A stretch of DNA of 64,000 bases from Selaginella moellendorffii (lineage: Eukaryota > Plantae > Lycopodiophyta), in NCBI RefSeq assembly GCF_000143415.4, contig NW_003314282.1, positions 345,700 to 409,699 on the forward strand. Direction: 5' to 3'. Of the stretch, positions 15,897 to 60,854 are shown piece after piece (within the stretch, counting starts at the first letter, position 1; the number at the start of each line of letters is the position of its first letter). Under the pieces are notes generated by a model. The model saw only the letters and a list, made by a program, of their open reading frames with translations, was not told where the DNA came from and did no database searches. Made by a program: the position numbers and the translations under genes.

Positions 15897-16875
15897 TTGG
15901 ATTTTCAGATCCTCCAAAGTGATTGGCAAGGGCGAGACTGGGGCCAGACGCAATACGAGAGGGTGATTATAATTGAGTTGCTTTGGAGCATTGCTCCTTT
16001 TTATTCTATTCTATTAGTTTCTTGGTGGTTGATAACCATTGATGGGAATGCTCTCCTTCTCTATCTCTTTTTGTCCTGCATTATCACTGCCAAGTAAATC
16101 TCTACGCTCTTTTTTTTTTGCAGTTGTCAATTCCGAATTCTATGGTTCACAGGCTGTTCCCAATCAATATTTTGCTTTCTCTTTGTTATATTGTTCTATT
16201 TCTGACACTGTCGCACCAGAAGGCCTCCTCTTTCTTGCGTAGGCAGTCTGGAAGCCATCTTCTCCGAGAAGTTCCCCATGCCAGAAACATCTGCTGGCGT
16301 CTTCTTTTTCTTCTTTTTCTTTTTCTTCTCTTACATTCTTTGTATGGCCAACGTTCAAATTTGTTTGTTTTTTACGATGGTTTTCTCAGCTTTTTCACAG
16401 GTGTTCCAATTCCAATCAAAGAAAGAGAGGTTTTGGCATTGTGTCCCAACTTTTTCTCCATCCAGATTTTGAGTATGAGATTGTTCTGATTGACCAGGTT
16501 TTCGTGTCAACGATCTTTGTATTGCTGGTGTTGAGTTCAGCAATGAGCTGAGCAAATTCATTAGATGTGACGTGCACGAGGAGGATTCCCATGTCAAGGA
16601 AATTGTTCATGTCGCTCTCATTGAGGTCTGGAGTTTTCCTCGGTTTCTCTTCACGGTTTTTAAAGGTGCTTCATATCAAGCAGGCTAAGGAGATCTTCAA
16701 GCCAATGTATGGTGTAGTTATCTCATTTCATGGAATTTTGATTTAGTTCTTTGAACAGCGCGATTCGACGAGGCTACTCAGCACAAGGCTATTGGAGCTT
16801 TAGAGAAATTTGCTGAGGCAACAGGAAACGATTTACCAGCAAATATGAAAAGCCTGAAGCCAGAATATTGTAAGC
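15897..16875 (+). pseudogene. Divergent or broken member of the half-MFS membrane protein family
   Basis: Tail at ~16768-16870 encodes DEATQHKAIGALEKFAEATGNDLPANMKSLKPEY, matching the family C-terminus; upstream hydrophobic segments contain stops. Confidence 0.5.
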
Positions 16876-17127
16876 TTACGGCTAAATATGTTACGCTTTC
16901 TTTCCTCAAATGTAGTGATGATCGAACTAGAGGAGCATTGATGCTACTTTCGCAGGCATGTAGCAGCTTAATAACCTATGTCTTAGAGCGAGCAATGATT
17001 GTTATTAGCTCATATATCAAACCAACTGCCATGGTTTGGTTTGCGTATTTAATCACATGTGGCTATGTGGAAAAATGCGATCCATGGAAATAATAAAAAA
17101 AATTGCTACGTGTTGCATGTAGCAACG

Positions 17128-26705: not shown

Positions 26706-27518
26706 CTAGTATTGGTTTAAAAGCTTAATATATTCTGGCTTCAGGCTTTTTATATCTGCTGGTAAATCATTTCCTGTTGCCTTAGCAAATTTCTCCAAAG
26801 CTTGAATAGCCTTGTCTTGAATAGCCTCAATAACTTGCATGTCGAGCTGTTGCGTCTTGAGTTCTTCTAAACCATATCCTCTTCGCAGAATTTCAAGTGG
26901 AGACTCCAGCATGTAGACATGAACCAGTAGCGCATAGACAAGCGCAACACCTGCTCCCAAAAATTGCCATCCTCGTGCAATGGGTTGAGCATACCACATA
27001 CAAACACCATAAAGTGCAGCCCTTACAAGGAGGAGCACGCCCTCGCATCCATACCAATCGTCGAAAGGTACGATTCCTGATGGAGTTGCAAACCCCCAGA
27101 ACTGTATCGCCTGAAAAGGGAGCACCACCCACAAATTCGTGGTCGCTGTGGAACAGATACCGCTGATGCCAGCAACAAGACAGCCATACGCGATTGCCTT
27201 CTTTCGACCCACGGTAGCCAACATTCGCGCTGTTCAAAGTTTCCTCAAGACTACATAAAATAAAACAGGAAAATAAAACTTACCTGAAATGGCACAGGCC
27301 ACCATAACCGCACAGACTCCCACAAACCGTCTGAATTCAGTATCTAGAGGGGGCAGATATGTATTACCCATCCAGATCCCATATGCGGTGTAGCAGTGAC
27401 TAACGAGATTCAGAAAGAACTGGCGCCATATAATCCAGTGACGACCAAGCTTCCAACCCTGGTAGATATCAGCAAGATCATACTCACCCTTTGGGGGGTC
27501 CAACAATCCCTCCTCCAT
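26706..27518 (-). CDS. Half-size MFS (SLC22/OCT N-half-like) membrane protein, 252 aa, 2 exons
   Basis: Exons 27518-27284 and 27229-26706 splice in frame; MEEGLL, GEYDLADIY, GRKK, NLWV, GWQ, LESP, KAIQALEKFAKATGNDLP. Confidence 0.75.
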
Positions 27519-32469: not shown

Positions 32470-32820
32470 GTACCCTATTGAGCAGGGATTGTTGAGCCCT
32501 GCGATCAAGATTACCTTTGTCATGGCTTCACTGCAGCTATCATACATTGGCCACCTCAGCTATCTGAAGAGGTATCTGAAACGATTGGAACCTTTGCTTT
32601 CTTAGCCAGTTTTTTTCTCTTCTTTTCCTAGAGACTTACAAGGGTGTCCATGTAGTTATGTTTTCTTTGGTGGAAAGAAAACGTACACATACGGTTTTCT
32701 TGTTGGGGGCATCTGTTCCATAACGAGCATGCTGGTGATATCATGCTGCTGCTGGTTTTCCAACAATGAGCTTGTGTTGATAAACAGCTGCTGAGGTCAC
32801 GATCCTATAAATTCAAGCAT
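32470..32820 (+). pseudogene. Half-MFS family pseudogene fragment
   Basis: YPIEQGLLSP, HWPPQL, FGGKKTYTYGFLVGGI remnants. Confidence 0.7.
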
Positions 32821-42889: not shown

Positions 42890-43395
42890 CATTGGCCGAT
42901 ATCTACAAGGCCTGGAATCTTGGTTGCAACTGGATTATGTTCCTCTGTATGGGTTTTATATGGCTACCATACATTCCCCTCAGCGATCTTCTCTGTAGCG
43001 ATTATGTATATTTTGTTTGGTCGAAAGAAAACGTACACATAACGTGTGTTCCATAATGACCACAAATCAATGGGTGGTGCTTCCGCTGCTATGCTGTGGA
43101 CTTTTCACTCCTTTCCTGGTATGATGGGGTTGGAGTGTTCGCGTTCATCGTGATTTCCATGGGGGTTCTTTTAGTTTGGCCACCATGGCAAGTACAAGCC
43201 CTTGTACTTGTGGGATCAATTTTCTACGCAGGGCTGCTTCATTTCTACATGTTACAGTCTCCACTTGAACTTCTATGGGTGGTTTTCCAGCAGACCTTGA
43301 TGTTGACAAACAGCTTGCTGTGATGCAAGAGAGCGCCATTCAAGCTTTGAGGGAGTTTGCTGAGGCAACAGGGAATGCTTTACCCAAGAATTTAC
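42890..43395 (+). pseudogene. Half-MFS family pseudogene
   Basis: LADIYKAWNLGCNWIM, FGRKKTYT*, TNQWVVLP, FYMLQSPLE, QESAIQALREFAEATGNALPKN with deletions. Confidence 0.8.
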
Positions 43396-43621
43396 TCAAG
43401 AAACGTGCACGATATGCTTAGCTCATAGTTGAGTTGGTTGCAAGTAATCCTTAAGAAATCCATTCTTCCTAGTGAGAATTTGTAGTTTTAAAATATTATG
43501 TGAATTTATATAAAGCTGACAAATATCCTCTTGGTCAAAGTCCACGCATGGCGACGAAAGCTTGGACCAGGACAGTGTGCTGCTTAACACAGTCTTGGGT
43601 TTGTTTGTTCGCTTGTCCTCG

Positions 43622-45536
43622 ATGGCTGGAGGATCTCTTCTCGCTCCATCGCTCGCAAATAGGCAGATCAATTACAAGGGTCGCACTACCATTCCGGTGT
43701 TGCTAGCTTGCATCGCGGCTGCCAGCGGAGGTTTGATATTTGGATATGACATTGGAATCTCAGGTATAGAAGAGGTTTTTACTTATTGCAAGTTCTACAG
43801 ATCTGCTCTCTCTCCCTCTCCCTCTCTGTTTTTTTTTTCTAGGTGGTGTTATTGCCATGGACGATTTTCTCATCAAGTTTTTCCCCACTGTCTATGTCCG
43901 CAAGCACGCTGCCCATGAGAACAATTACTGTAAGTATGACAACCAAGGTCTCCAGGCATTCACATCCTCGCTCTATCTCGCGGCTCTTTTTGCGAGCTTT
44001 GGAGCTTCCTACGTGACGAGCAACAAGGGGCGACGCCCAACAATGCTAATTGGTGGCCTCAGCTTTCTCGTTGGAGCGGCTCTCAATGCTGCCGCAGAGA
44101 ATTTGGCGATGCTTATCATCGGCCGGATGATGCTGGGTGTTGGAGTCGGCTTTGGAAATCAGGCATGAGACTCCCTTTTTGTTTTCATTCTTTTATCTTC
44201 GTCACAAACTTACAAAGGTTTGCATTTTTCTTCGCAGGTAAGCTTGATCTATGTTCTTGGTTTTTTTGGACAGAGCTAAAGTTCTGGTAAAGGAAGATTA
44301 ACCATGCGGTTTTCTCCTCCAGGTAAGACTGCATTGGGATGAAACATTTTAACTTCAAAGGGAACTTCATCATAGAGAACGAAAACAGTCTTTTATTTAT
44401 TTTTTTCTTTTTGTTGCCAGTCAGTACCAGTCTACTTATCAGAGATGGCACCACCAAAACTTCGCGGTGGTCTCAACATAATGTTCCAGCAAGCCGTCAA
44501 CTTTGGGATCTTGTGTGCGAATCTCATCAACTATGGCACTGCTAATCTCCAGCCCTGGGGATGGAGACTTTCGCTCGGCCTTGCGGCAGTCCCAGCATCG
44601 CTCCTCACCCTTGCGGCCATTTTCCTCTCCGACACTCCAAACAGCCTGATTGAGCGAGGCCATCTCGAGCAAGGGAAATCAGTCCTCCAGAAAATCCGAG
44701 GAACTCCAGACGTGGAGGCCGAGTTCCAGGATCTGGTGGAAGCCAGCAGAGTTGCGTCGACGATCAAGGATCCATTTCTTAGCATCTTTCGCCGGAAGAA
44801 CAGGCCCCAGCTCACAATGGCCGTGCTCATTCCATACTTTCAGCAAGTCACAGGCATCAATGTTATAACTTTCTACGCTCCGGTGTTGTTCCAGTCGATC
44901 GGGTTCCACAGCAATGCCTCGCTCTACTCGGCAGTGATCACGGGATTGATGCTGATCATTGGAACTGGAATCTCGATCTTCACGGTTGACAAGTTTGGCC
45001 GGAGAGTTCTCTTTCTCCATGGAGGAATTCTTATGTTTATTGGCCAGGTAAGTCATGATCGATCACAGTACTTACAAATGTTTCCAATGATTTTCAAGGT
45101 TGTCACTGGACTGGTTCTAGCATTCGAGTTCAAGGGGAACGAAGAGCTCTCTCGGGGATTTGCAGTTGTGATTTTGGTGGTGACATGCGTTTACGTGGTT
45201 TCTTTCGCGTGGTCTTGGGGACCTCTGGGATGGCTGGTTCCCAGCGAAGTTTTCGCTCTTGAGACGAGATCTGCTGGTCAATGCATCACCGTCGCAGTAA
45301 ACATGCTCTTCACCTTTGCGGTCGCGCAATCTTTTCTCTCGATGTTTTGCCACTTCAGGTTTGGGATCTTCTTGTTCTTCGCGGGCTGGGTGGTGGTCAT
45401 GACGCTCTTCGTGCATTTCTTCTTGCCCGAGACGAAGAAAGTCCCAATCGAGGAAATGCAGCAAGAGTGGAGCAAGCACTGGTACTGGCGTCGATTTGCT
45501 CAAGAACAAGAAAACCAAGATGATTCCAAGCCGTAG
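43622..45536 (+). CDS. STP: Monosaccharide/H+ symporter (sugar transport protein family); 4 exons
   Basis: [31 protein letters not shown]|[47 protein letters not shown]; intron 2 (44163-44420) begins with GC. Confidence 0.93.
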
Positions 45537-52893: not shown

Positions 52894-55497
52894 ATGCGCG
52901 CGGATGGAGCTGCAAAGCATTGCATAGATTGCTGTAGCAGGAGAAGGAAGAATCGCAGCTCCTCCACCTGGAGGACGCTCGATCGGGTCAGTATTTCGGA
53001 GACTTCGTCGCGCGTCACCGATATTTCGTCGCGCGGTGCCATCGATCAGGCATTCGTGTGGATCCTGCTCGACGCACTCAAGGCCTGCATTGCCTCCAAG
53101 AATCTCGACGCAGGGAAGAGGATCCATGCCGATTCCGTGGAATCGGGAGCGTTCTTCTCTGGCGCGCACGTCCCCAATGCAATCCTCGGGATGTATTCCA
53201 GGTGTGGATCGCTGCCCGACGCTAGAGCAGTGTTTGAGACGATCGCATCGCCGGGCTTGGCCTCGTGGACGGCGCTCATGTCTGGGTATGCCAACAACGA
53301 TCAAGGCGAGGAGGCTCTCGGCATCTTTGCTCGAATGGAGGAACAGGGATTGGAGGCCGATGCTAAAGCCTACGTCGCGGCGCTCATCGCCTGTGGAAGC
53401 TTGGCCGCGAAAGAGACTCCACAGATGGTTGCGGGTGAGAGGAGTTTTAGCGTCAAGCTTGGATCACTGGAGAGAGGGATGGATCTCCACTCTCGAGCGA
53501 TGAAAAGCGGCTGTTACTCCGACAAGTTCGTGGCTGGCACGCTCGTGGATATGTACTGCAAGTGTGGGAGCTTGCTCGATGCTCGCAGAGTTTTCGACCA
53601 GATGGTGGCGAGGGACGTGGTTGTGTGGAACAGCTTGATCCTGGGCTATGCCGAGAATGGAGAGGAGGAGCTAGCTCTGGAAGTTTTCTGCCGAATGGAC
53701 TGCCCGAGCCCGCGGACTTTCCTGGCGGCCGTGATCGCGTGTGGGAACCTGGCCGCCAGAGAAGAGAGCAAGGTGGTGGACGGGAAGCTTGTCAAGGTCC
53801 GGAGCTTGGAGAAAGGATTGCTCGTCCACTCTCAGGCCGAGAGAAGCAGCGGTGGAGTGGATATCTTTATTGCTAGCGGCTTGGTCGGGATGTACTCCAA
53901 GTGCGGCAGCATGATGAATGCCGGGCTGGTGTTTGAGAAGATCGTCCGCAAGGATCTGGTGCTGTGGAACTCTCTCATTCTCGGCTACATCGACAACTGG
54001 GAGTTCGACCTCGCTCTTAAGTCCTTTGAGCGGATGCAAGCGGAGGCCTGCGCACCGAATTGCCGGACTTTCGTGGCTGCTCTCATGGCCTATGGAGGAC
54101 TCGCTGCTCGAGAAGATTACGGCAGCGAGCCAAGGAAGCAGGCCTTGAAGGCGGAGCTTCTGCGGAAAGTCGAGGCCATTCACGCGCAAGCTGCCAGATC
54201 CGGGTGTGAGTTCGACGTCTTCGTGGCGAGCACGTTGGTGGACTCGTATGCAAAGTGTGGGAGCCTGGAGAAATCTCGGGAGGTGTTCGAGAGGATGCCG
54301 CTCCATGATCTGGTGACTTGGAACTCGCTCATCATGGGACACGCCGATAACGGTGAAGGCGTGCTCGCTCTCGAGTGGTTCCAACGCATGAGGTCTCAGG
54401 GCTGTGTTCCAGACTCTCGGGCCTTCTTGGGAGCGCTGAAAGGTTGCATCGACATAGCCACCAACTCGAAAGAAGCCGAAGTGGAAGTTGACGAGAACAA
54501 GTTCGTGAAGCCTGGCTGCTTGGACAAAGCAATGGCAGTTCACTCTCAGGCGATCGAGTTTGGCTGCGAATCCGACATCTTTGTGGCCAGCGCTCTTGCC
54601 GACCTCTATGTGAAATGCGGGAGCTTGTTGGACGCCCGGGTCGTCTTCGACAGGATCCCGTCCCACAACGCGGTGCTGTGGACGACTCTTTTGATGGGAT
54701 ACGCCGAGAAGGACGAGCCCGAGCTGGCTCTGGAGCTCTACTGGAGGATGGAACCCGAGAGCCGTGCCGCCAACACGCGGATCTTCGTTGCTGGCCTCAC
54801 AGCATCCAGCGGGCTGGCAGCGATTGAGATTGGTCGGAAGATCCATGCGGAGGCGTGCCAGAATGGAGGCGAGAAGGACCAGTTCGTGGCGAACAGCCTG
54901 CTCGACATGTACTGCAAGTGTGGGAGCTTGGCCGCGGCGGAGCACGTCTTTGACTCGATGAGCTCGAGAAACGTTGTAACTTGGAGCACGGTCATCGCTG
55001 GCTATAGCCGGGAGGGCGAGACGGAGCTGGTGTTTGAGCTCTTCCAGGCCATGATCGATGGAGGGATCGGTCTCAACGGGATCACTTGCCTCTCGGTTCT
55101 CTCAGCCTGCGGTCACGCTGGCCTAGTCGATCGAGGCACCAAGTTCTTCCGCGAAATGTCCTCGAAGTTTGGAGTGACTCCGAGCTTGGAGCACTACCAC
55201 TGCCTGATCGATCTGCTGGGCCGGGCCAACCGAGTAGAGGAGGCTCTGGAGCTGGCGAGCAGCATGCCTACGAGAGCAAGCTCTTTGACGTGGAAGACTG
55301 TTCTTGGCGGATGCTGGAAGTGGAAGAACGCCAAGGTTGCCGAGGTTGCGTTTGAGAAGCTCTTGGAATTCGATGACAAGCAGGCGAGTGCGTATATCTT
55401 GATGGCAAACATCTATCGGAGTGTAGGGATGGAGAAGGAAGAGCTTAGAGTAGTGAGAATGGGAAAGAACGAGTGTAATGGTATTGACTTCTCTTAA
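52894..55497 (+). CDS. PLS-class PPR protein with E domain, 867 aa
   Basis: Repeated DxFVAxxLVDMYxKCGSLxDARxVF; HYHCLIDLLGRA...WKTVLGGC; intronless. Confidence 0.93.
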   Translation: MRADGAAKHCIDCCSRRRKNRSSSTWRTLDRVSISETSSRVTDISSRGAIDQAFVWILLDALKACIASKNLDAGKRIHADSVESGAFFSGAHVPNAILGMYSRCGSLPDARAVFETIASPGLASWTALMSGYANNDQGEEALGIFARMEEQGLEADAKAYVAALIACGSLAAKETPQMVAGERSFSVKLGSLERGMDLHSRAMKSGCYSDKFVAGTLVDMYCKCGSLLDARRVFDQMVARDVVVWNSLILGYAENGEEELALEVFCRMDCPSPRTFLAAVIACGNLAAREESKVVDGKLVKVRSLEKGLLVHSQAERSSGGVDIFIASGLVGMYSKCGSMMNAGLVFEKIVRKDLVLWNSLILGYIDNWEFDLALKSFERMQAEACAPNCRTFVAALMAYGGLAAREDYGSEPRKQALKAELLRKVEAIHAQAARSGCEFDVFVASTLVDSYAKCGSLEKSREVFERMPLHDLVTWNSLIMGHADNGEGVLALEWFQRMRSQGCVPDSRAFLGALKGCIDIATNSKEAEVEVDENKFVKPGCLDKAMAVHSQAIEFGCESDIFVASALADLYVKCGSLLDARVVFDRIPSHNAVLWTTLLMGYAEKDEPELALELYWRMEPESRAANTRIFVAGLTASSGLAAIEIGRKIHAEACQNGGEKDQFVANSLLDMYCKCGSLAAAEHVFDSMSSRNVVTWSTVIAGYSREGETELVFELFQAMIDGGIGLNGITCLSVLSACGHAGLVDRGTKFFREMSSKFGVTPSLEHYHCLIDLLGRANRVEEALELASSMPTRASSLTWKTVLGGCWKWKNAKVAEVAFEKLLEFDDKQASAYILMANIYRSVGMEKEELRVVRMGKNECNGIDFS

Positions 55498-55709
55498 ATC
55501 ACACACTATTTCCTCTAATATTTTTTTCAAACTCCAAAGCTTTTGGCTTTATAAAATAACCCTTTGCCATTTTCAACTAACCATAGATTTATTGGTTCAA
55601 GACATTTGAATCTGAGTTTCCTAGCGTCTCATAAAAAGACATTTAAATCTGAGTTTTCTATCTAGGGAATTCAGAGAGAATTAACAACTCTGAGGTTTTC
55701 TGAAGAGCC

Positions 55710-56526
55710 TCAACTTTGAGGTTTTCTGAGGCTCTTCAGATTTTTTGGTAAAGTATTCCCTGTAGCCTCGGCAAACTCCCTCAAAGCTTCAATGGCCTTC
55801 TCTTGGCGCACAGCAAGCCGCTCGTCCATATCCATTTCTCCCAACCTATCGCAGCTACCATATAGCATTTCGAGTGGAGACTGCAACATGTAGAAATAAA
55901 TCAGCATCCCGTGGACAATTGCAGCGATCGATCCCACAAGTAGAAGGGCTTGTCTATGCCATCCCAACGGTGGAGCAACGGTCCCCAAAACACAGGCAGC
56001 CATGTAACTCAAACCCCTCGTCATGTACACCACCATGAACTTGAACAATCCGGGCCCGTCGTACCAACTGTCAGGAGCTGGTTGTAATACCGGAGTGAAA
56101 AGTCCACAGCATGATATCGCCAGCAGCGGAAGCATCACCCATTGATTTGTGCTCATTATGGAACACACACCACTGAGAAAACCGCTGGTGCCTCCAACAA
56201 GAAAACCATATGCATTGCTTTTCTTTCGACCCAAAAGGGCAACGAAAAATACTGCATGGACGCACTTGTCAGTCAGTCTCGAGAGAGAAAGCAGTGAAAC
56301 ACTTACATGCTACGAAGACGGGAACCAAAGCAGAAGCTCCGCTTCCTTCGGGGAACTCAGGGGGCCAAAATATGGCACCCATATAGAACGCATATATACT
56401 GAAGCAATGACTAACAAGATTCATCAAGAACTGGCGCCGTATAATCCAGTGCCCACTGAGGTTCCAACTCTCGTAGATATCAGCAAGATCATACTCACCA
56501 TTTGGGCTCAACAATCCCTGCTCCAT
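55710..56526 (-). CDS. Half-size MFS (SLC22/OCT N-half-like) membrane protein, 253 aa, 2 exons
   Basis: Exons 56526-56307 and 56251-55710 splice in frame (762 nt); family motifs intact. Confidence 0.78.
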
Positions 56527-56979
56527 AGGGTAATCCTCTTTCCCCAAATATATCCTTGACAGTAGCTCATCCGACGGCTATTAGAAAAGGTCTTAGCTGA
56601 TGTGTGAGACTGATTTGGCTGCCATTTGGCACCCATATCAGCCCTAAACTGCCACGACGATTACACATAGTTTGTGGAAAACGAAAGAAAGAGGAAAGAG
56701 CAGAATCCCAATCGTGCTCCAGGACGCGCGTCGACTTCCCTGTGGGGCTTCATCGCCGCGCAACCTGCGATTGAGCCATCAACCAAGGACAAATGTGGGA
56801 CGAATAAGCGTAATGCCATGCACATCAACGCCAGAATCCTTTGGCTCGTGCTCTCGTGGCCCCGCGAGTTTTATATTTTAAAAAACGCGCGGGATTAGAT
56901 TTTTAAAATAGGTTACTGATGAAATATCTTTGACTTGGTTTTTTATTTCTGGCAAGAGAACTCAGGAACTACAAGCCGA

Positions 56980-57790
56980 TTACAGAAGCGGACAGCACTC
57001 AGTTTTCCTGAGGCTCTTCAAATTTTCTGGGAGAGTCTTCCCTGCGGCCTCCGCAAACCCCCTCAAAGCTTCAATGGCCATCTCTTGTCGAACAGCAAGC
57101 CGCTGGTCTATATCCATTCCTCTTAAACCCTCGCAACCACCTAGAATTTCCAGTGGGGACTGCAACATGTAGAAATGAAACAGCATCGCATAGACAATAG
57201 CTGCGGTCGATCCCACAAGTGCAACAGCTTGAACTTGCCATCCGACCGGTGGAGCAACGATGGCAGCCACAATACAGGCCAGGTTAGCCATTTGCCTCAT
57301 TATGAGGACAACCATGAAGATAACCAAACTGCGGCCGTCATTCCAAGCTTCAGGCGAAAGTATTGCTGCTGGAGTGCAAAGTCCACAGAATAATATCACC
57401 ACCGGCAGAAGCACCACCCACTGATTCGTGATCATTGCGGAAAGAACACCGCTGATGCCCCCAACAAGAAAACCGTATGTCAAAGCTTTCTTTCGACCAA
57501 AGCGAACGAGCATACTTACTGCATGGAGCTCTTGTTAGTCTTTAAAAAGGGAAGAAAGAAAACTGACCTGATAACAACATGGCCGGAAAGCAACCTACTG
57601 GAGCTAACTGAGGGGATAGCTGAGCGGGCCAATGTATGGTAGCCATATAAAACCCATATGCAGTGAAGCCATGACAGACAAGGTTCATCAAGAACTGGCG
57701 CCACATAATCCAGTGGCAACCAAGGTTCCAGCCCTTGTAGATATCAGCAAGATCATACTCACCATTTGGGCTCAGCAATCCCTGCTCCAT
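56980..57790 (-). CDS. Half-size MFS (SLC22/OCT N-half-like) membrane protein, 253 aa, 2 exons
   Basis: Exons 57790-57568 and 57518-56980 splice in frame (762 nt); tandem paralog of 55710-56526. Confidence 0.78.
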
Positions 57791-58159
57791 AGGGTAACCT
57801 AGCAATTCCTAGAGAAAGCAGCCCTTTTCTAGTATCTTTGACCGTTGGGTGGCACCTTATCCGATATTTCCAGCTCTGAGGTATAAAAATAAAACCTTTT
57901 CTTGTATTCTCAGCGTGAACTACGGCACCGATGGCGCTACGAAACTCCAATATCTTACCACCCGCTTTACTCCTTAACTAAGGATCTAAGTCCCAGCCGG
58001 GTTTTGGATCAATCAGCTACTCCAAATTCTCGGGGTAAATCAGGCACTGGAGGAGCGACCAAAGTCCAAATAGTATTGCGTTAGAGCCAGTGCCCCAATC
58101 CGGTAGAGAGACAACAGCCCTAAAAATAGCGCAGCCTTGAACCGAAACAAGCGTCCCTG

Positions 58160-58360
58160 TTTTTCTCTCCATGCCTGTGCTTGTCCGGAAGATTTGACAG
58201 AAGGAAAGCTGATCCACGCCCGTGAGGAATGCTCTTGTAGACATGTATGGAAAATGCGGCTGTCTAGAGAAAACTCGCGAACTGTTTGAATCTGAAACAG
58301 TGGAGAGGAACTTAGTCAGTTGGAGCGTCATGGTTGCGGCTTACGCACGTGATATCCATG
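58160..58360 (+). pseudogene. PPR gene fragment
   Basis: NALVDMYGKCGCLEKTRELFE..RNLVSWSVMVAAYAR. Confidence 0.75.
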
Positions 58361-59745: not shown

Positions 59746-59989
59746 AAGTGGCACGGTCTCTTTCACAAGGTGGCGGAGAAGAACACGAATGCGCCACGGA
59801 TGCCGACGCTTGCTGGTGAGATCAGTGCCTGCTGCTTGGCAATCTCTGCGACTACCTAGAACGCAATCTAACGTGGTGATAGAACAATTTTATTTCGCGA
59901 ACCCCACGTCGAGCAGAGTAAAAAAAAACAAAACTCAGCGAGCGAGCGAACTCTACAACAATGTTTGTAGAGTAAAAACTAGAAAGGCC

Positions 59990-60854
59990 TCAAACTAGCA
60001 TCAGGCAGGTAAGAATTGCTGCACAGCCCGCGGCAAACATGGTGGACATCTGAAAAACCAACCAAAGTTTTAATCCAGAACGAAGAAGATTAGAAACTTA
60101 CTAGGATGGCCTTGTTGTCATCGAGGGTCGCAAACCAAGCCCATGCCACGTTACAAGCCAGAGATACGAGTGGCACCACCCAGCTCCAACGGGCACTGCT
60201 GTGAGGGAGGGTCGCCACTCGAACAGCAAGGGGAGCAAGAATCGAGGCTGCTGTGGTCGCAGGCAGAACTCCTCCCCGTCGTAGAAGTTGCGCAACAGGT
60301 ACACTAGACAGTAGTGACTGATCCCAAGCACCGGGGGCCAGAAGAGGGGCTTCCATGTAGCCTTCCATGCATATGCAGCATAGAAAACTCCCGTGATGAA
60401 CCCCAGAAGATTCACCACCTCGACCACACGATCGTTGTGCTCACGGCCGAAAATATACCAAGATATCGAATTTATCTCTGGAGAGAAAAAAAAAAACGTT
60501 GCAAACTGGAATGAAAATGAAAAAAAGAAAACGCACCGGAGAGGCCGAAGAAAACACTCGACTGAATCCCCGTCTCAAGGAATGGAAGGGGAATCAGGAA
60601 GAGGACGACAGTGATCGAGACAGCTGCACGCTAAACAAAGAAACACACACTTGTTCCAGGACAGGCAAGCATTGGTTTCTTACTCGGATGTTCTTCTTCG
60701 GCACCGCGCCCAGGATCTTGCTTATTGCGCCTCCGGCAGTCCCTGGTGCTGCGCCCAGGAGAGTGTCGCTCGCCGCTTCACCACCAGCGCCATGATCGGC
60801 CGCCGTCACGGGGAGCGCATCGCCGCCGCCCGCCATTCCGCCGGACCCCGACAT
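59990..60854 (-). pseudogene. Second divergent SWEET-like gene, frameshifted
   Basis: AVSITVVLFLIPL..VFFGLS|, VNLLG, LFWPPV, ILAPL, SLACNVAWAWF parallel to 19731-20963 with matching intron positions. Confidence 0.45.

What the first reader, a model, noticed from the sequence alone, without database searches (positions are those of the whole stretch)
55710..57790. Expanded family of 'half-MFS' proteins: only the N-terminal 6-TM bundle of an SLC22/OCT-like transporter
Seen: three intact two-exon genes (26706-27518, 55710-56526, 56980-57790) each encode 252-253 aa with the same phase-1 intron just before GRKK, and three broken copies lie at ~15.9-16.9, ~32.5 and ~42.9 kb. The proteins are quite diverged yet keep length and frame, which suggests purifying selection. 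Known: plant OCT/SLC22 N-halves carry GRK after TM2, NxWV before TM4, WR at the start of TM6, then ESPRWL..EA..L..A..NG..LP in the central loop; these appear here in order as GRKK, N(Q/L)WV, GWQ, (E/Q)SPLE and EAL..FA.ATG..LP. The proteins stop right after that loop and lack the large TM1-2 extracellular loop and the motif-A Asp. Inference: a lineage-specific semi-MFS family that may homo/heterodimerise into a 12-TM carrier (analogous to SemiSWEETs) or regulate full-length transporters.
Basis: partly seen in the sequence, partly recalled or inferred. Interest (0 to 1): 0.85.

Follow-up and report, generated by a model that had tools for sequence, protein, structure and literature searches.

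The report
Expressed half-transporter gene family in Selaginella
A spikemoss (Selaginella moellendorffii) carries a tandemly multiplied, transcribed family of ~253-residue membrane proteins that are only the first half of an organic-cation-type (SLC22/MFS) transporter, which is unusual because such transporters normally need both halves in one chain; what the half does is still unknown.

Summary
Three intact two-exon genes lie on the minus strand at 26706-27518, 55710-56526 and 56980-57790. They encode 252/253/253 aa and share one phase-1 GT-AG intron 7-9 codons before GRKK. Three decayed copies lie at 16.8, 32.5 and 42.9-43.4 kb.

The window is Selaginella moellendorffii. These genes are already annotated there as hypothetical proteins, and UniProt names two paralogs 'MFS profile domain-containing'.

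Spliced RNA contigs from four studies cover only the exons and confirm both introns. One shows a poly(A) tail 55 nt after the stop of the 56980-57790 gene. No C-terminal half is spliced on.

Profile-profile comparison links residues ~58-246 to TM2-TM6 plus the first central-loop helix of OCT/SLC22 proteins (94%, P~1e-7). Other MFS score far lower, and reversed controls give nothing.

The motif-A Asp, the TM1-2 loop and most gating charges are gone. Paralog dN/dS is 0.5-1.2. TM2 and TM5 evolve fastest; the cytosolic N-tail and loop helix are conserved. Allelic dN/dS is 0.16.

The family was found only in this species. No paper describing it was found. Dimerisation and transport remain untested. 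The scan flagged the same family on another piece of this genome.

The parts
56307..56526 (-). g2 exon 1 (ATG at 56526; cytosolic N-tail, TM1, most of TM2)
   Evidence: RNA contigs with 0-1 mismatches and joint 56251>56307 in 4 runs
56252..56306 (-). g2 intron, 55 nt, GT..AG, phase 1
   Evidence: skipped in RNA contigs of runs X1, X2, X3 and X7
55710..56251 (-). g2 exon 2 (end of TM2, GRKK, TM3-TM6, loop helix, stop at 55710-55712)
   Evidence: 96-98% identical to S. moellendorffii LOC9649576
57568..57790 (-). g3 exon 1
   Evidence: RNA contig 57684-57783
57519..57567 (-). g3 intron, 49 nt, GT..AG, phase 1
   Evidence: joint 57518>57568 in runs X1 and X7
56980..57518 (-). g3 exon 2 with stop at 56980-56982
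   Evidence: RNA contig 56938-57475 with 0 mismatches; ~99% identical to SELMODRAFT_416695
56925..56979 (-). g3 3' UTR ending at a poly(A) site (run of T as loose end before 56925 on the + strand)
   Evidence: table 7 (X3) and record 21
27284..27518 (-). g1 exon 1
   Evidence: product matches SELMODRAFT_413564 (P0010)
27230..27283 (-). g1 intron, 54 nt, GT..AG, phase 1 (not checked with reads)
26706..27229 (-). g1 exon 2 with stop
16770..16889 (+). remnant: only the last ~40 codons of a g1-like copy
   Evidence: 75% identity to P0010 residues 213-252
32506..32761 (+). decayed copy: two pieces (residues ~35-68 and ~82-127) in different frames, with internal deletions; GRKK changed to GGKK
42892..43415 (+). 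pseudogene closest to paralog P0005: frame changes, deletions and in-frame stops; lies just upstream of a full-length STP sugar-transporter gene

Best explanation
These are real protein-coding genes of a Selaginella moellendorffii-specific, tandemly amplified family.

Shown:
- Each gene encodes a free-standing MFS N-domain: a cytosolic N-tail, six membrane helices and the first intracellular helix of the central loop.
- The family is homologous to the N-half of SLC22/OCT-type (Sugar_tr) transporters.
- The large TM1-TM2 loop is absent.
- The mRNA ends right after the loop helix.
- The reading frame is maintained by selection.
- The cytosolic N-tail, GRKK, TM6 and the loop helix are conserved. 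TM2, TM4 and TM5 change fast. In a full MFS these three helices face the C-domain.
- The charges that drive the canonical rocker switch are lost: the motif-A Asp, the TM4 Arg, the E..R pair and the Arg of PESPR.

Inferred:
- The family arose by truncation of a full-length SLC22/OCT-type gene. No parent gene was identified.
- The protein is not a canonical carrier on its own.
- It most likely acts as a membrane subunit that pairs through its exposed domain interface. The partner could be itself, a paralog or a full-length MFS.
- The conserved cytosolic ends would provide the constant function, such as sorting or partner binding.
- The interface helices would diversify among paralogs.
For: Homology:
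- hhalign, family vs OCT/SLC22: 94.4%, P=9.5e-8, family 58-246 to OCT 128-299.
- 13-member family vs SLC22 only: P=2.8e-7, score 58.7. Vs non-SLC22 MFS: P=0.004, score 30.7. Reversed controls: score ~20.6.
- The only non-family phmmer hit among 1.84 billion representatives is an insect OCT-like model.
- Atlas feature neighbours are Sugar_tr/MFS_1, score 0.97.
- Weak MFS_1 hits fall in the N-half register.
- The next hits of the family profile are MFS proteins, E 0.25-0.41 in 5.8 billion.

Fold and topology:
- Six hydrophobic segments, with K/R clustered in the N-tail, the TM2-3 loop, the TM4-5 loop and the C-end.
- The AF2 model reaches pLDDT 78.5. It matches OAT1/URAT1/OCT1 N-domains at Z 15-17, rmsd 3.5, ~220 residues.

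Expression and 3' end:
- RNA contigs cover exons only. Both introns are spliced. A poly(A) tail lies 55 nt after the g3 stop. Intergenic depth is zero.

Selection:
- Allelic dN/dS is 0.155, p=1.3e-5.
- By region: N-tail 0.32, TM6 0.34, loop helix 0.49, TM2 1.16, TM5 1.18.
- Simulated probability of keeping an open frame without selection is 0.03 per lineage at g2/g3 divergence.
- g2/g3 similarity stops at the CDS borders.
- Unselected copies in the same window have decayed.

Lost motifs are visible in alignment A3.
Against: - No direct evidence of protein, oligomer or activity.
- The youngest paralog pairs have dN/dS ~1.0-1.3. This fits relaxed constraint as well as diversification.
- Pfam gathering thresholds are not reached, and the family profile finds no PDB sequence.
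- With family sequences alone AF2 gave pLDDT 40. The good model depends on MFS rows in the alignment, so it is partly circular for TM2-TM6.
- The per-helix dN/dS figures pool overlapping pairs and rest on small counts.
Confidence: 0.5

Rival explanations
1. True semi-transporter. Two N-domains, from the same or different paralogs, assemble in parallel around a two-fold axis into a 12-helix carrier or uniporter, as SemiSWEETs do for SWEETs.
For: - The N-in/C-in six-helix topology allows a parallel dimer.
- Separately expressed LacY halves rebuild a working permease (PMC8154325, read).
- Many co-expressed paralogs could give combinatorial pairs.
- TM1 and parts of TM4 keep invariant residues.
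Against: - The charge network that couples the two domains in MFS carriers is mostly gone: the motif-A Asp, the TM4 Arg, the E..R pair and the Arg of PESPR.
- The membrane core evolves at dN/dS ~1 while the cytosolic ends are conserved. That is the opposite of what is typical for carriers.
- No natural N-N MFS dimer carrier was found in the literature searched.
Confidence: 0.2
2. Transcribed but functionless relics. A truncated duplicate of an OCT-type gene was copied in tandem and is drifting. Expression reflects retained promoters only.
For: - dN/dS is 0.99 (g2 vs P0002) and 1.03-1.28 (g3 vs P0004) for the youngest pairs.
- Several copies in the window are already pseudogenes.
- Canonical MFS motifs are lost.
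- The family is found in one species only.
Against: - Older pairs have dN/dS 0.50-0.65, with p=0.012 to 2e-5.
- Allelic dN/dS is 0.155.
- At least six distinct paralogs, at nucleotide distances of 0.06-0.38 from one another, all keep the frame, length, intron and splice sites. The neutral expectation of an open frame is 0.03 or less per lineage at g2/g3 divergence.
- Similarity ends exactly at the CDS borders.
- The N-tail (82% identity) and loop helix are strongly conserved.
Confidence: 0.2
3. Annotation or assembly artefact. The C-terminal half lies elsewhere and is joined by splicing, or the copies are gene fragments carried by a transposon.
For: Older JGI models fuse some copies with upstream sequence (P0011, P0029, P0042).
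Against: - A poly(A) tail lies 55 nt after the g3 stop, and RNA depth is zero between and beyond the genes.
- g3's stop is 454 nt from g2's start codon. g2 is followed by a convergent PPR gene.
- No repeated flanks or terminal repeats surround the copies.
- The N-terminal extensions of the fused models have no domain.
Confidence: 0.03

Closest known systems
SLC22 / organic cation-anion transporters (OCT, OAT, URAT1, OCTN; Pfam Sugar_tr PF00083, MFS clan)
   Same: - Collinear, almost gap-free alignment from TM2 to TM6 and into the first central-loop helix.
- Shared G-R-(K/R) after TM2, N.W before TM4, W before TM6, S-P after TM6, and A..(A/I)L..A..(N/T)G..LP in the loop helix.
- The N-tail EYD...G..G motif resembles that of amphioxus and fish SLC22.
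- Best structural matches.
   Different: - Only the N-domain, 253 aa instead of ~550.
- No TM7-12 and no large TM1-TM2 loop.
- Motif-A Asp, TM4 Arg, the E..R pair and the Arg of PESPR are lost.
- A ~20-residue insertion lies after TM6.
- Below the Pfam thresholds.
SemiSWEET (3-helix half of SWEET sugar transporters, active as a parallel homodimer)
   Same: A free-standing half of an internally duplicated transporter fold, with a topology that would allow a parallel dimer.
   Different: - Unrelated fold.
- SemiSWEETs are ancestral-type bacterial proteins with demonstrated transport. This family looks secondarily truncated, is species-restricted and has no functional data.
- The analogy rests on inference and on the review read.
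Split LacY N6/C6 halves co-expressed (laboratory construct; cited in PMC8154325)
   Same: Shows that a six-helix MFS bundle can fold and insert as an independent polypeptide.
   Different: - That case pairs an N-half with its own C-half.
- Here no matching C-half gene was found near the genes, and none was searched for genome-wide.
Short MFS-like predicted proteins of 200-280 aa in other eukaryotes (ESM Atlas clusters)
   Same: Similar length and Sugar_tr/MFS_1 signal.
   Different: Their status is unknown, and many may be fragmentary gene models. Here the full transcript structure and 3' end are supported by RNA.

Membership tests
Major facilitator superfamily (MFS), N-domain | Six membrane helices, N-terminus and C-terminus cytosolic | tested here: met
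   Hydropathy shows segments at ~33-53, 60-81, 86-106, 107-127, 138-160 and 170-192. K/R cluster in the N-tail, the TM2-3 loop, the TM4-5 loop and the C-end. AF2 helices agree.
Major facilitator superfamily (MFS), N-domain | Statistically supported sequence-profile similarity to MFS proteins | tested here: met
   hhalign 94.4%, P=9.5e-8. P=2.8e-7 against reversed controls at P~0.1. Atlas neighbours Sugar_tr/MFS_1, 0.97.
Major facilitator superfamily (MFS), N-domain | Reaches the Pfam gathering score for MFS_1 or Sugar_tr | tested here: not met
   Best is MFS_1 at E=0.33, 10 bits against a cutoff of 33.4, in 2 of 6 paralogs. No Sugar_tr hit.
Major facilitator superfamily (MFS), N-domain | Motif A G-x-x-x-D-(R/K)-x-G-R-(R/K) in the TM2-TM3 loop | tested here: not met
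   G-R-K-K is invariant, but the Asp column holds V, A, G, S, F, Y, L or T in the family.
Major facilitator superfamily (MFS), full transporter | Twelve helices: N- and C-domain in one chain | tested here: not met
   ORF of 252-253 aa. A poly(A) tail lies 55 nt after the g3 stop. No RNA beyond the genes.
SLC22 / OCT subfamily | Closer to SLC22 than to other MFS subfamilies | tested here: met
   hhalign score 58.7 vs SLC22 against 30.7 vs five non-SLC22 MFS. Top structural matches are OAT1/URAT1/OCT1 (partly circular). Plant OCTs and sugar porters were not compared as profiles.
SLC22 / OCT subfamily | Large extracellular loop between TM1 and TM2 | tested here: not met
   6-10 residues in the family against ~100 in the OCT sequences.
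SLC22 / OCT subfamily | P-E-S-P-R-W-L after TM6 | tested here: inconclusive
   S-P is invariant, E is kept as Q or E, and R-W is replaced by L-E, S-E or R-E.
SLC22 / OCT subfamily | Central-loop helix E-A..(I/V)L..A..N-G..L-P | tested here: met
   The family has (K/M)A-I-(E/Q)-A-L-R-.-F-A-.-A-T-G-.-.-L-P aligned to it.
SLC22 / OCT subfamily | N-terminal signature before TM1 (F/Y-D..L...G.(F/W)G.FQ) | tested here: inconclusive
   E-Y-D plus G at +7 is shared with P0020 and P0021 by eye. hhalign on the first 60 residues gives P=0.005, 23 columns, collinear.
Half-transporters that act as dimers (SemiSWEET-type logic) | Forms a homo- or heterodimer with a central substrate path | not testable with these tools
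   No multimer prediction or experiment was available.

The most novel reading that the evidence does not exclude
The family is the first natural 'semi-MFS': N-domains of the same or different paralogs pair in parallel into a working 12-helix transporter or channel. The rapidly diverging TM2, TM4 and TM5 helices set partner and substrate specificity.
Probability: 0.15. Interest if true: 0.85.

Novelty: new variant of a known kind. Interest (0 to 1): 0.55.

Why it matters
MFS transporters are described as two six-helix bundles in one chain. Free-standing halves are known from laboratory splitting of LacY. In the literature I could search, I found no described natural, expressed gene family of halves.

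A species-specific, multiplied, transcribed N-domain-only family gives a natural system for three questions:
- Can an MFS half fold, traffic and pair on its own?
- Which surfaces are freed or re-used when the partner domain is lost?
- Can such halves modulate full-length carriers?

It also warns annotators that short 'MFS-like' models are not always fragments.

Tried and rejected
- Pfam on single exons and on six full-length paralogs gave no significant family.
- PDB sequence searches with one paralog and with the family profile gave nothing. Histone H2A.Z hits at E 0.6-1.9 on the C-terminal helix were judged chance.
- AF2 with seven family sequences only gave pLDDT 40 and was unusable.
- Foldseek E-values for the second model stay above 0.001, although all top 50 hits are MFS.
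- I asked whether older fused gene models (P0011, P0029, P0042) carry a SWEET or other domain upstream. No domain was found, so the extensions look like model artefacts.
- Transposon capture: similarity between g2 and g3 ends at the CDS borders, with no repeated flanks.
- Relatives outside S. moellendorffii: none were found by phmmer over 1.84 billion representatives or by a family profile over 5.8 billion proteins of 139-443 aa.
- The parental full-length Selaginella OCT gene and plant OCT sequences could not be fetched, because no plant genome collection is searchable here.
- Five literature searches for natural half or split MFS proteins or a Selaginella OCT study found nothing relevant. 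The Selaginella sugar-transporter inventory (PMC3355790) contained none of the search words for truncated, partial or fragmentary genes.

Full report
**1. What is in the sequence**

The region holds two tandem minus-strand genes.
- g2: exon 1 56307-56526, intron 56252-56306, exon 2 55710-56251.
- g3: exon 1 57568-57790, intron 57519-57567, exon 2 56980-57518.

A third copy, g1, lies at 26706-27518 with its intron at 27230-27283. The products are 252 aa (g1) and 253 aa (g2, g3). All three have one GT..AG intron in phase 1, seven to nine codons upstream of an invariant GRKK.

A tblastn of family proteins against the window finds three further copies, all on the + strand and all broken:
- 16770-16889: only the last ~40 codons.
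- 32506-32761: two pieces with deletions, GRKK mutated to GGKK.
- 42892-43415: frame changes, deletions and stops.

**2. Organism and existing annotation**

The proteins match Selaginella moellendorffii entries at 96-99% identity. g3 is SELMODRAFT_416695, g2 is LOC9649576 and g1 is SELMODRAFT_413564. The gene order around g3 and g2 (PPR genes, chorismate synthase) matches GL377596.1 near 1.40 Mb in reverse orientation.

All family members are named 'hypothetical' or 'uncharacterized'. UniProt names two paralogs 'MFS profile domain-containing protein'. The family forms two clusters, each present on two scaffolds that look like the two haplotypes of that assembly. I infer roughly a dozen or more loci per haploid genome from the distinct locus names.

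No relative outside this species was found. This holds for phmmer against 1.84 billion representative proteins and for a 13-sequence profile against 5.8 billion proteins of 139-443 aa.

**3.

Contigs of four runs from four studies were laid on 55300-58200. The tool only guesses that these runs are RNA. The spliced joints show that they are.

- Coverage is confined to the exons of g2 and g3 and to the neighbouring PPR gene.
- Depth is zero in 55591-55687, 56561-56851 and 57822-58112.
- The joint 56251>56307 (CT..AC on the + strand, which is GT..AG on the minus strand) appears in all four runs.
- The joint 57518>57568 appears in two runs.
- A contig of run X3 covers 56925-57475 and carries twelve T before 56925. 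That is a poly(A) tail 55 nt after the g3 stop.
- g3's stop is only 454 nt from g2's start codon. g2 is followed by a convergent PPR gene.

There is neither room nor RNA evidence for exons encoding a C-terminal half. The exact 3' end of g2 is not resolved by contigs.

**4. Homology**

Pfam gives nothing significant. MFS_1 reaches E=0.33 in two paralogs, though in the N-half register. PDB sequence searches are blank.

Three independent lines point to MFS of the Sugar_tr/SLC22 type.

(a) The only non-family hit of the exhaustive phmmer search is an insect OCT-like model.

(b) The nearest ESM-Atlas clusters by language-model features are Sugar_tr/MFS_1. The score is 0.97, and 49 of 60 hits carry that Pfam set.

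(c) Profile-profile comparison:
- Family vs OCT/SLC22 plus other MFS proteins collected: 94.4%, P=9.5e-8, family 58-246 aligned to OCT 128-299.
- 13 family members vs eight SLC22-type proteins only: P=2.8e-7, score 58.7.
- Vs five non-SLC22 MFS: P=0.004, score 30.7.
- Vs reversed templates: score ~20.6.

A joint alignment (A3) is almost gap-free from TM2 to TM6. Its invariant columns are G82, R83, W168, S195 and P196, and A222 is nearly invariant (90% or more). The loop-helix pattern A..AL..FA.ATG..LP lies over EA..(I/V)L..A..NG..LP.

The first 60 residues give only a weak, collinear match (P=0.005). By eye, E-Y-D and the following glycines mirror the N-termini of amphioxus and fish SLC22 proteins.

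**5. Fold**

Hydropathy gives six segments with a positive-inside pattern that fits N-in/C-in.

AF2 with family rows only failed (pLDDT 40). With MFS N-half rows added it gave pLDDT 78.5 and pTM 0.75. The N-tail and TM1 scored 82-84, although they were covered by family rows only.

All 50 best Foldseek hits are MFS, with OCT1 first at E=6.5e-3. VIA-align gives Z 15-17, rmsd ~3.5 and ~220 aligned residues to OAT1, URAT1, OCT1 and OCT3. In rows whose alignment stays within the N-half, model 12-253 aligns to chain residues 1 to ~320.

This model is partly circular for TM2-TM6, so I use it as a consistency check and not as proof.

**6. What has been lost**

- The ~100-residue TM1-TM2 loop.
- The Asp of motif A.
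- The Arg of the TM4 R-F-(F/L)-x-G motif.
- In most paralogs, the Arg of the E..R pair.
- The Arg of PESPR.

By established knowledge of MFS carriers, these charges couple the two domains during alternating access. That is my inference and was not tested here.

**7. Selection**

Nei-Gojobori dN/dS between paralogs:
- Older pairs: 0.50-0.65 (Fisher p=0.012 to 2e-5).
- Youngest pairs: 0.99 (g2 vs P0002) and 1.03-1.28 (g3 vs P0004).

By region, pooled over four pairs that overlap, with small counts:

| Region | Identity | dN/dS |
|---|---|---|
| N-tail | 82% | 0.32 |
| GRKK | invariant | n/a |
| TM6 | 65% | 0.34 |
| Loop helix | 72% | 0.49 |
| TM2 | 22% | 1.16 |
| TM5 | 34% | 1.18 |
| TM4 | 57% | above 1 |

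Three window-versus-reference allele pairs give 15 synonymous and 8 non-synonymous differences. That is dN/dS 0.155, p=1.3e-5.

Random substitution alone leaves an open frame with probability 0.03 per lineage at g2/g3 divergence and 0.003 at 0.25 substitutions per site.

Similarity between g2 and g3 stops within about 20 nt of the CDS ends. The unselected copies in the same window have frameshifts and deletions.

The genes are therefore maintained by selection. The membrane core, especially the helices that face the C-domain in a full MFS, is either relaxed or diversifying.

**8. Interpretation**

What it is: a free-standing, SLC22-derived MFS N-domain family, real and expressed. I hold this with high confidence.

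How it works is inferred. The pattern combines conserved cytosolic ends with fast-changing interface helices and lost gating charges. This fits a subunit that pairs through its exposed interface and whose constant function sits in the cytosolic N-tail and loop helix. It fits an autonomous carrier less well.

Drifting relics is the other serious rival (0.2). An annotation artefact is essentially excluded.

**9. Novelty**

The genes and the MFS-profile label are already in public databases. The scan's first stage flagged the same family on another piece of this genome (s1-385155).

I found no paper on natural half-MFS proteins or on this family. The MFS review I read mentions only the laboratory split of LacY.

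I rate it a new variant of a known kind and moderately interesting. The interest would rise sharply if pairing or transport were shown.

**10. Limits**

- Plant OCT sequences and the parental Selaginella gene could not be fetched.
- No multimer prediction and no site-model tests were possible.
- Read evidence comes from contigs, so expression levels and exact transcript ends are not measured, apart from the one poly(A) end.

Noticed in passing
window 43562-45536 (+): A full-length STP-type sugar transporter gene (Sugar_tr) in at least three exons lies immediately downstream of the decayed half-MFS copy at 42892-43415. So a complete 12-helix MFS and a half-MFS relic are neighbours.
   Followed up: partly
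window ~59950-60850 (-); L003:6953-7845: A 216-aa gene with a faint MtN3/SWEET signal sits ~2.1 kb upstream of g3 on the same strand. Another first-stage note (s1-403003) proposes a SWEET-like unit fused to a half OCT elsewhere in this genome. The fused models I checked (P0011, P0029, P0042) show no such domain.
   Followed up: partly
window 57109 (g3, linker after TM6): One RNA contig of run X7 lacks 15 nt here. This is an in-frame five-codon deletion, from an allele or close paralog.
   Followed up: no
window 57502>57615: A second joint in runs X1 and X7 skips 112 nt with non-canonical ends (CG..GG on the + strand). It may be a paralog-derived contig or an alternative or aberrant splice. Unexplained.
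   Followed up: no
window 56092 and 56526: Contigs match g2 and then run on into different sequence. The loose end before 56092 translates to the F-M-Q-P-I-P-D-D-W stretch of paralog P0005, so other family members are also transcribed. The 5' UTR sequence beyond the ATG at 56526 differs from the window.
   Followed up: partly
window 52894-55497 (+): An intronless 867-aa PPR protein with an E motif lies convergent to g2. An RNA contig of run X7 shows C>T at 55331, 55332 and 55371. This is more likely allelic than editing, but no matched DNA run was compared.
   Followed up: no
protein P0014 (Homalodisca vitripennis, not in the window): An 891-aa insect gene model holds about ten tandem copies of an OCT TM2-TM3 unit before a normal OCT N-half. 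It is probably an assembly or annotation artefact. Its repeats inflated its phmmer score against the family.
   Followed up: no
family residues ~175-248 (C-terminal part): The family profile gives sub-threshold hits (E 0.6-1.9) to histone H2A.Z, along L-A-(V/I)-R..E..(A/S)L.....A.G..LP..KSL. Judged chance.
   Followed up: partly
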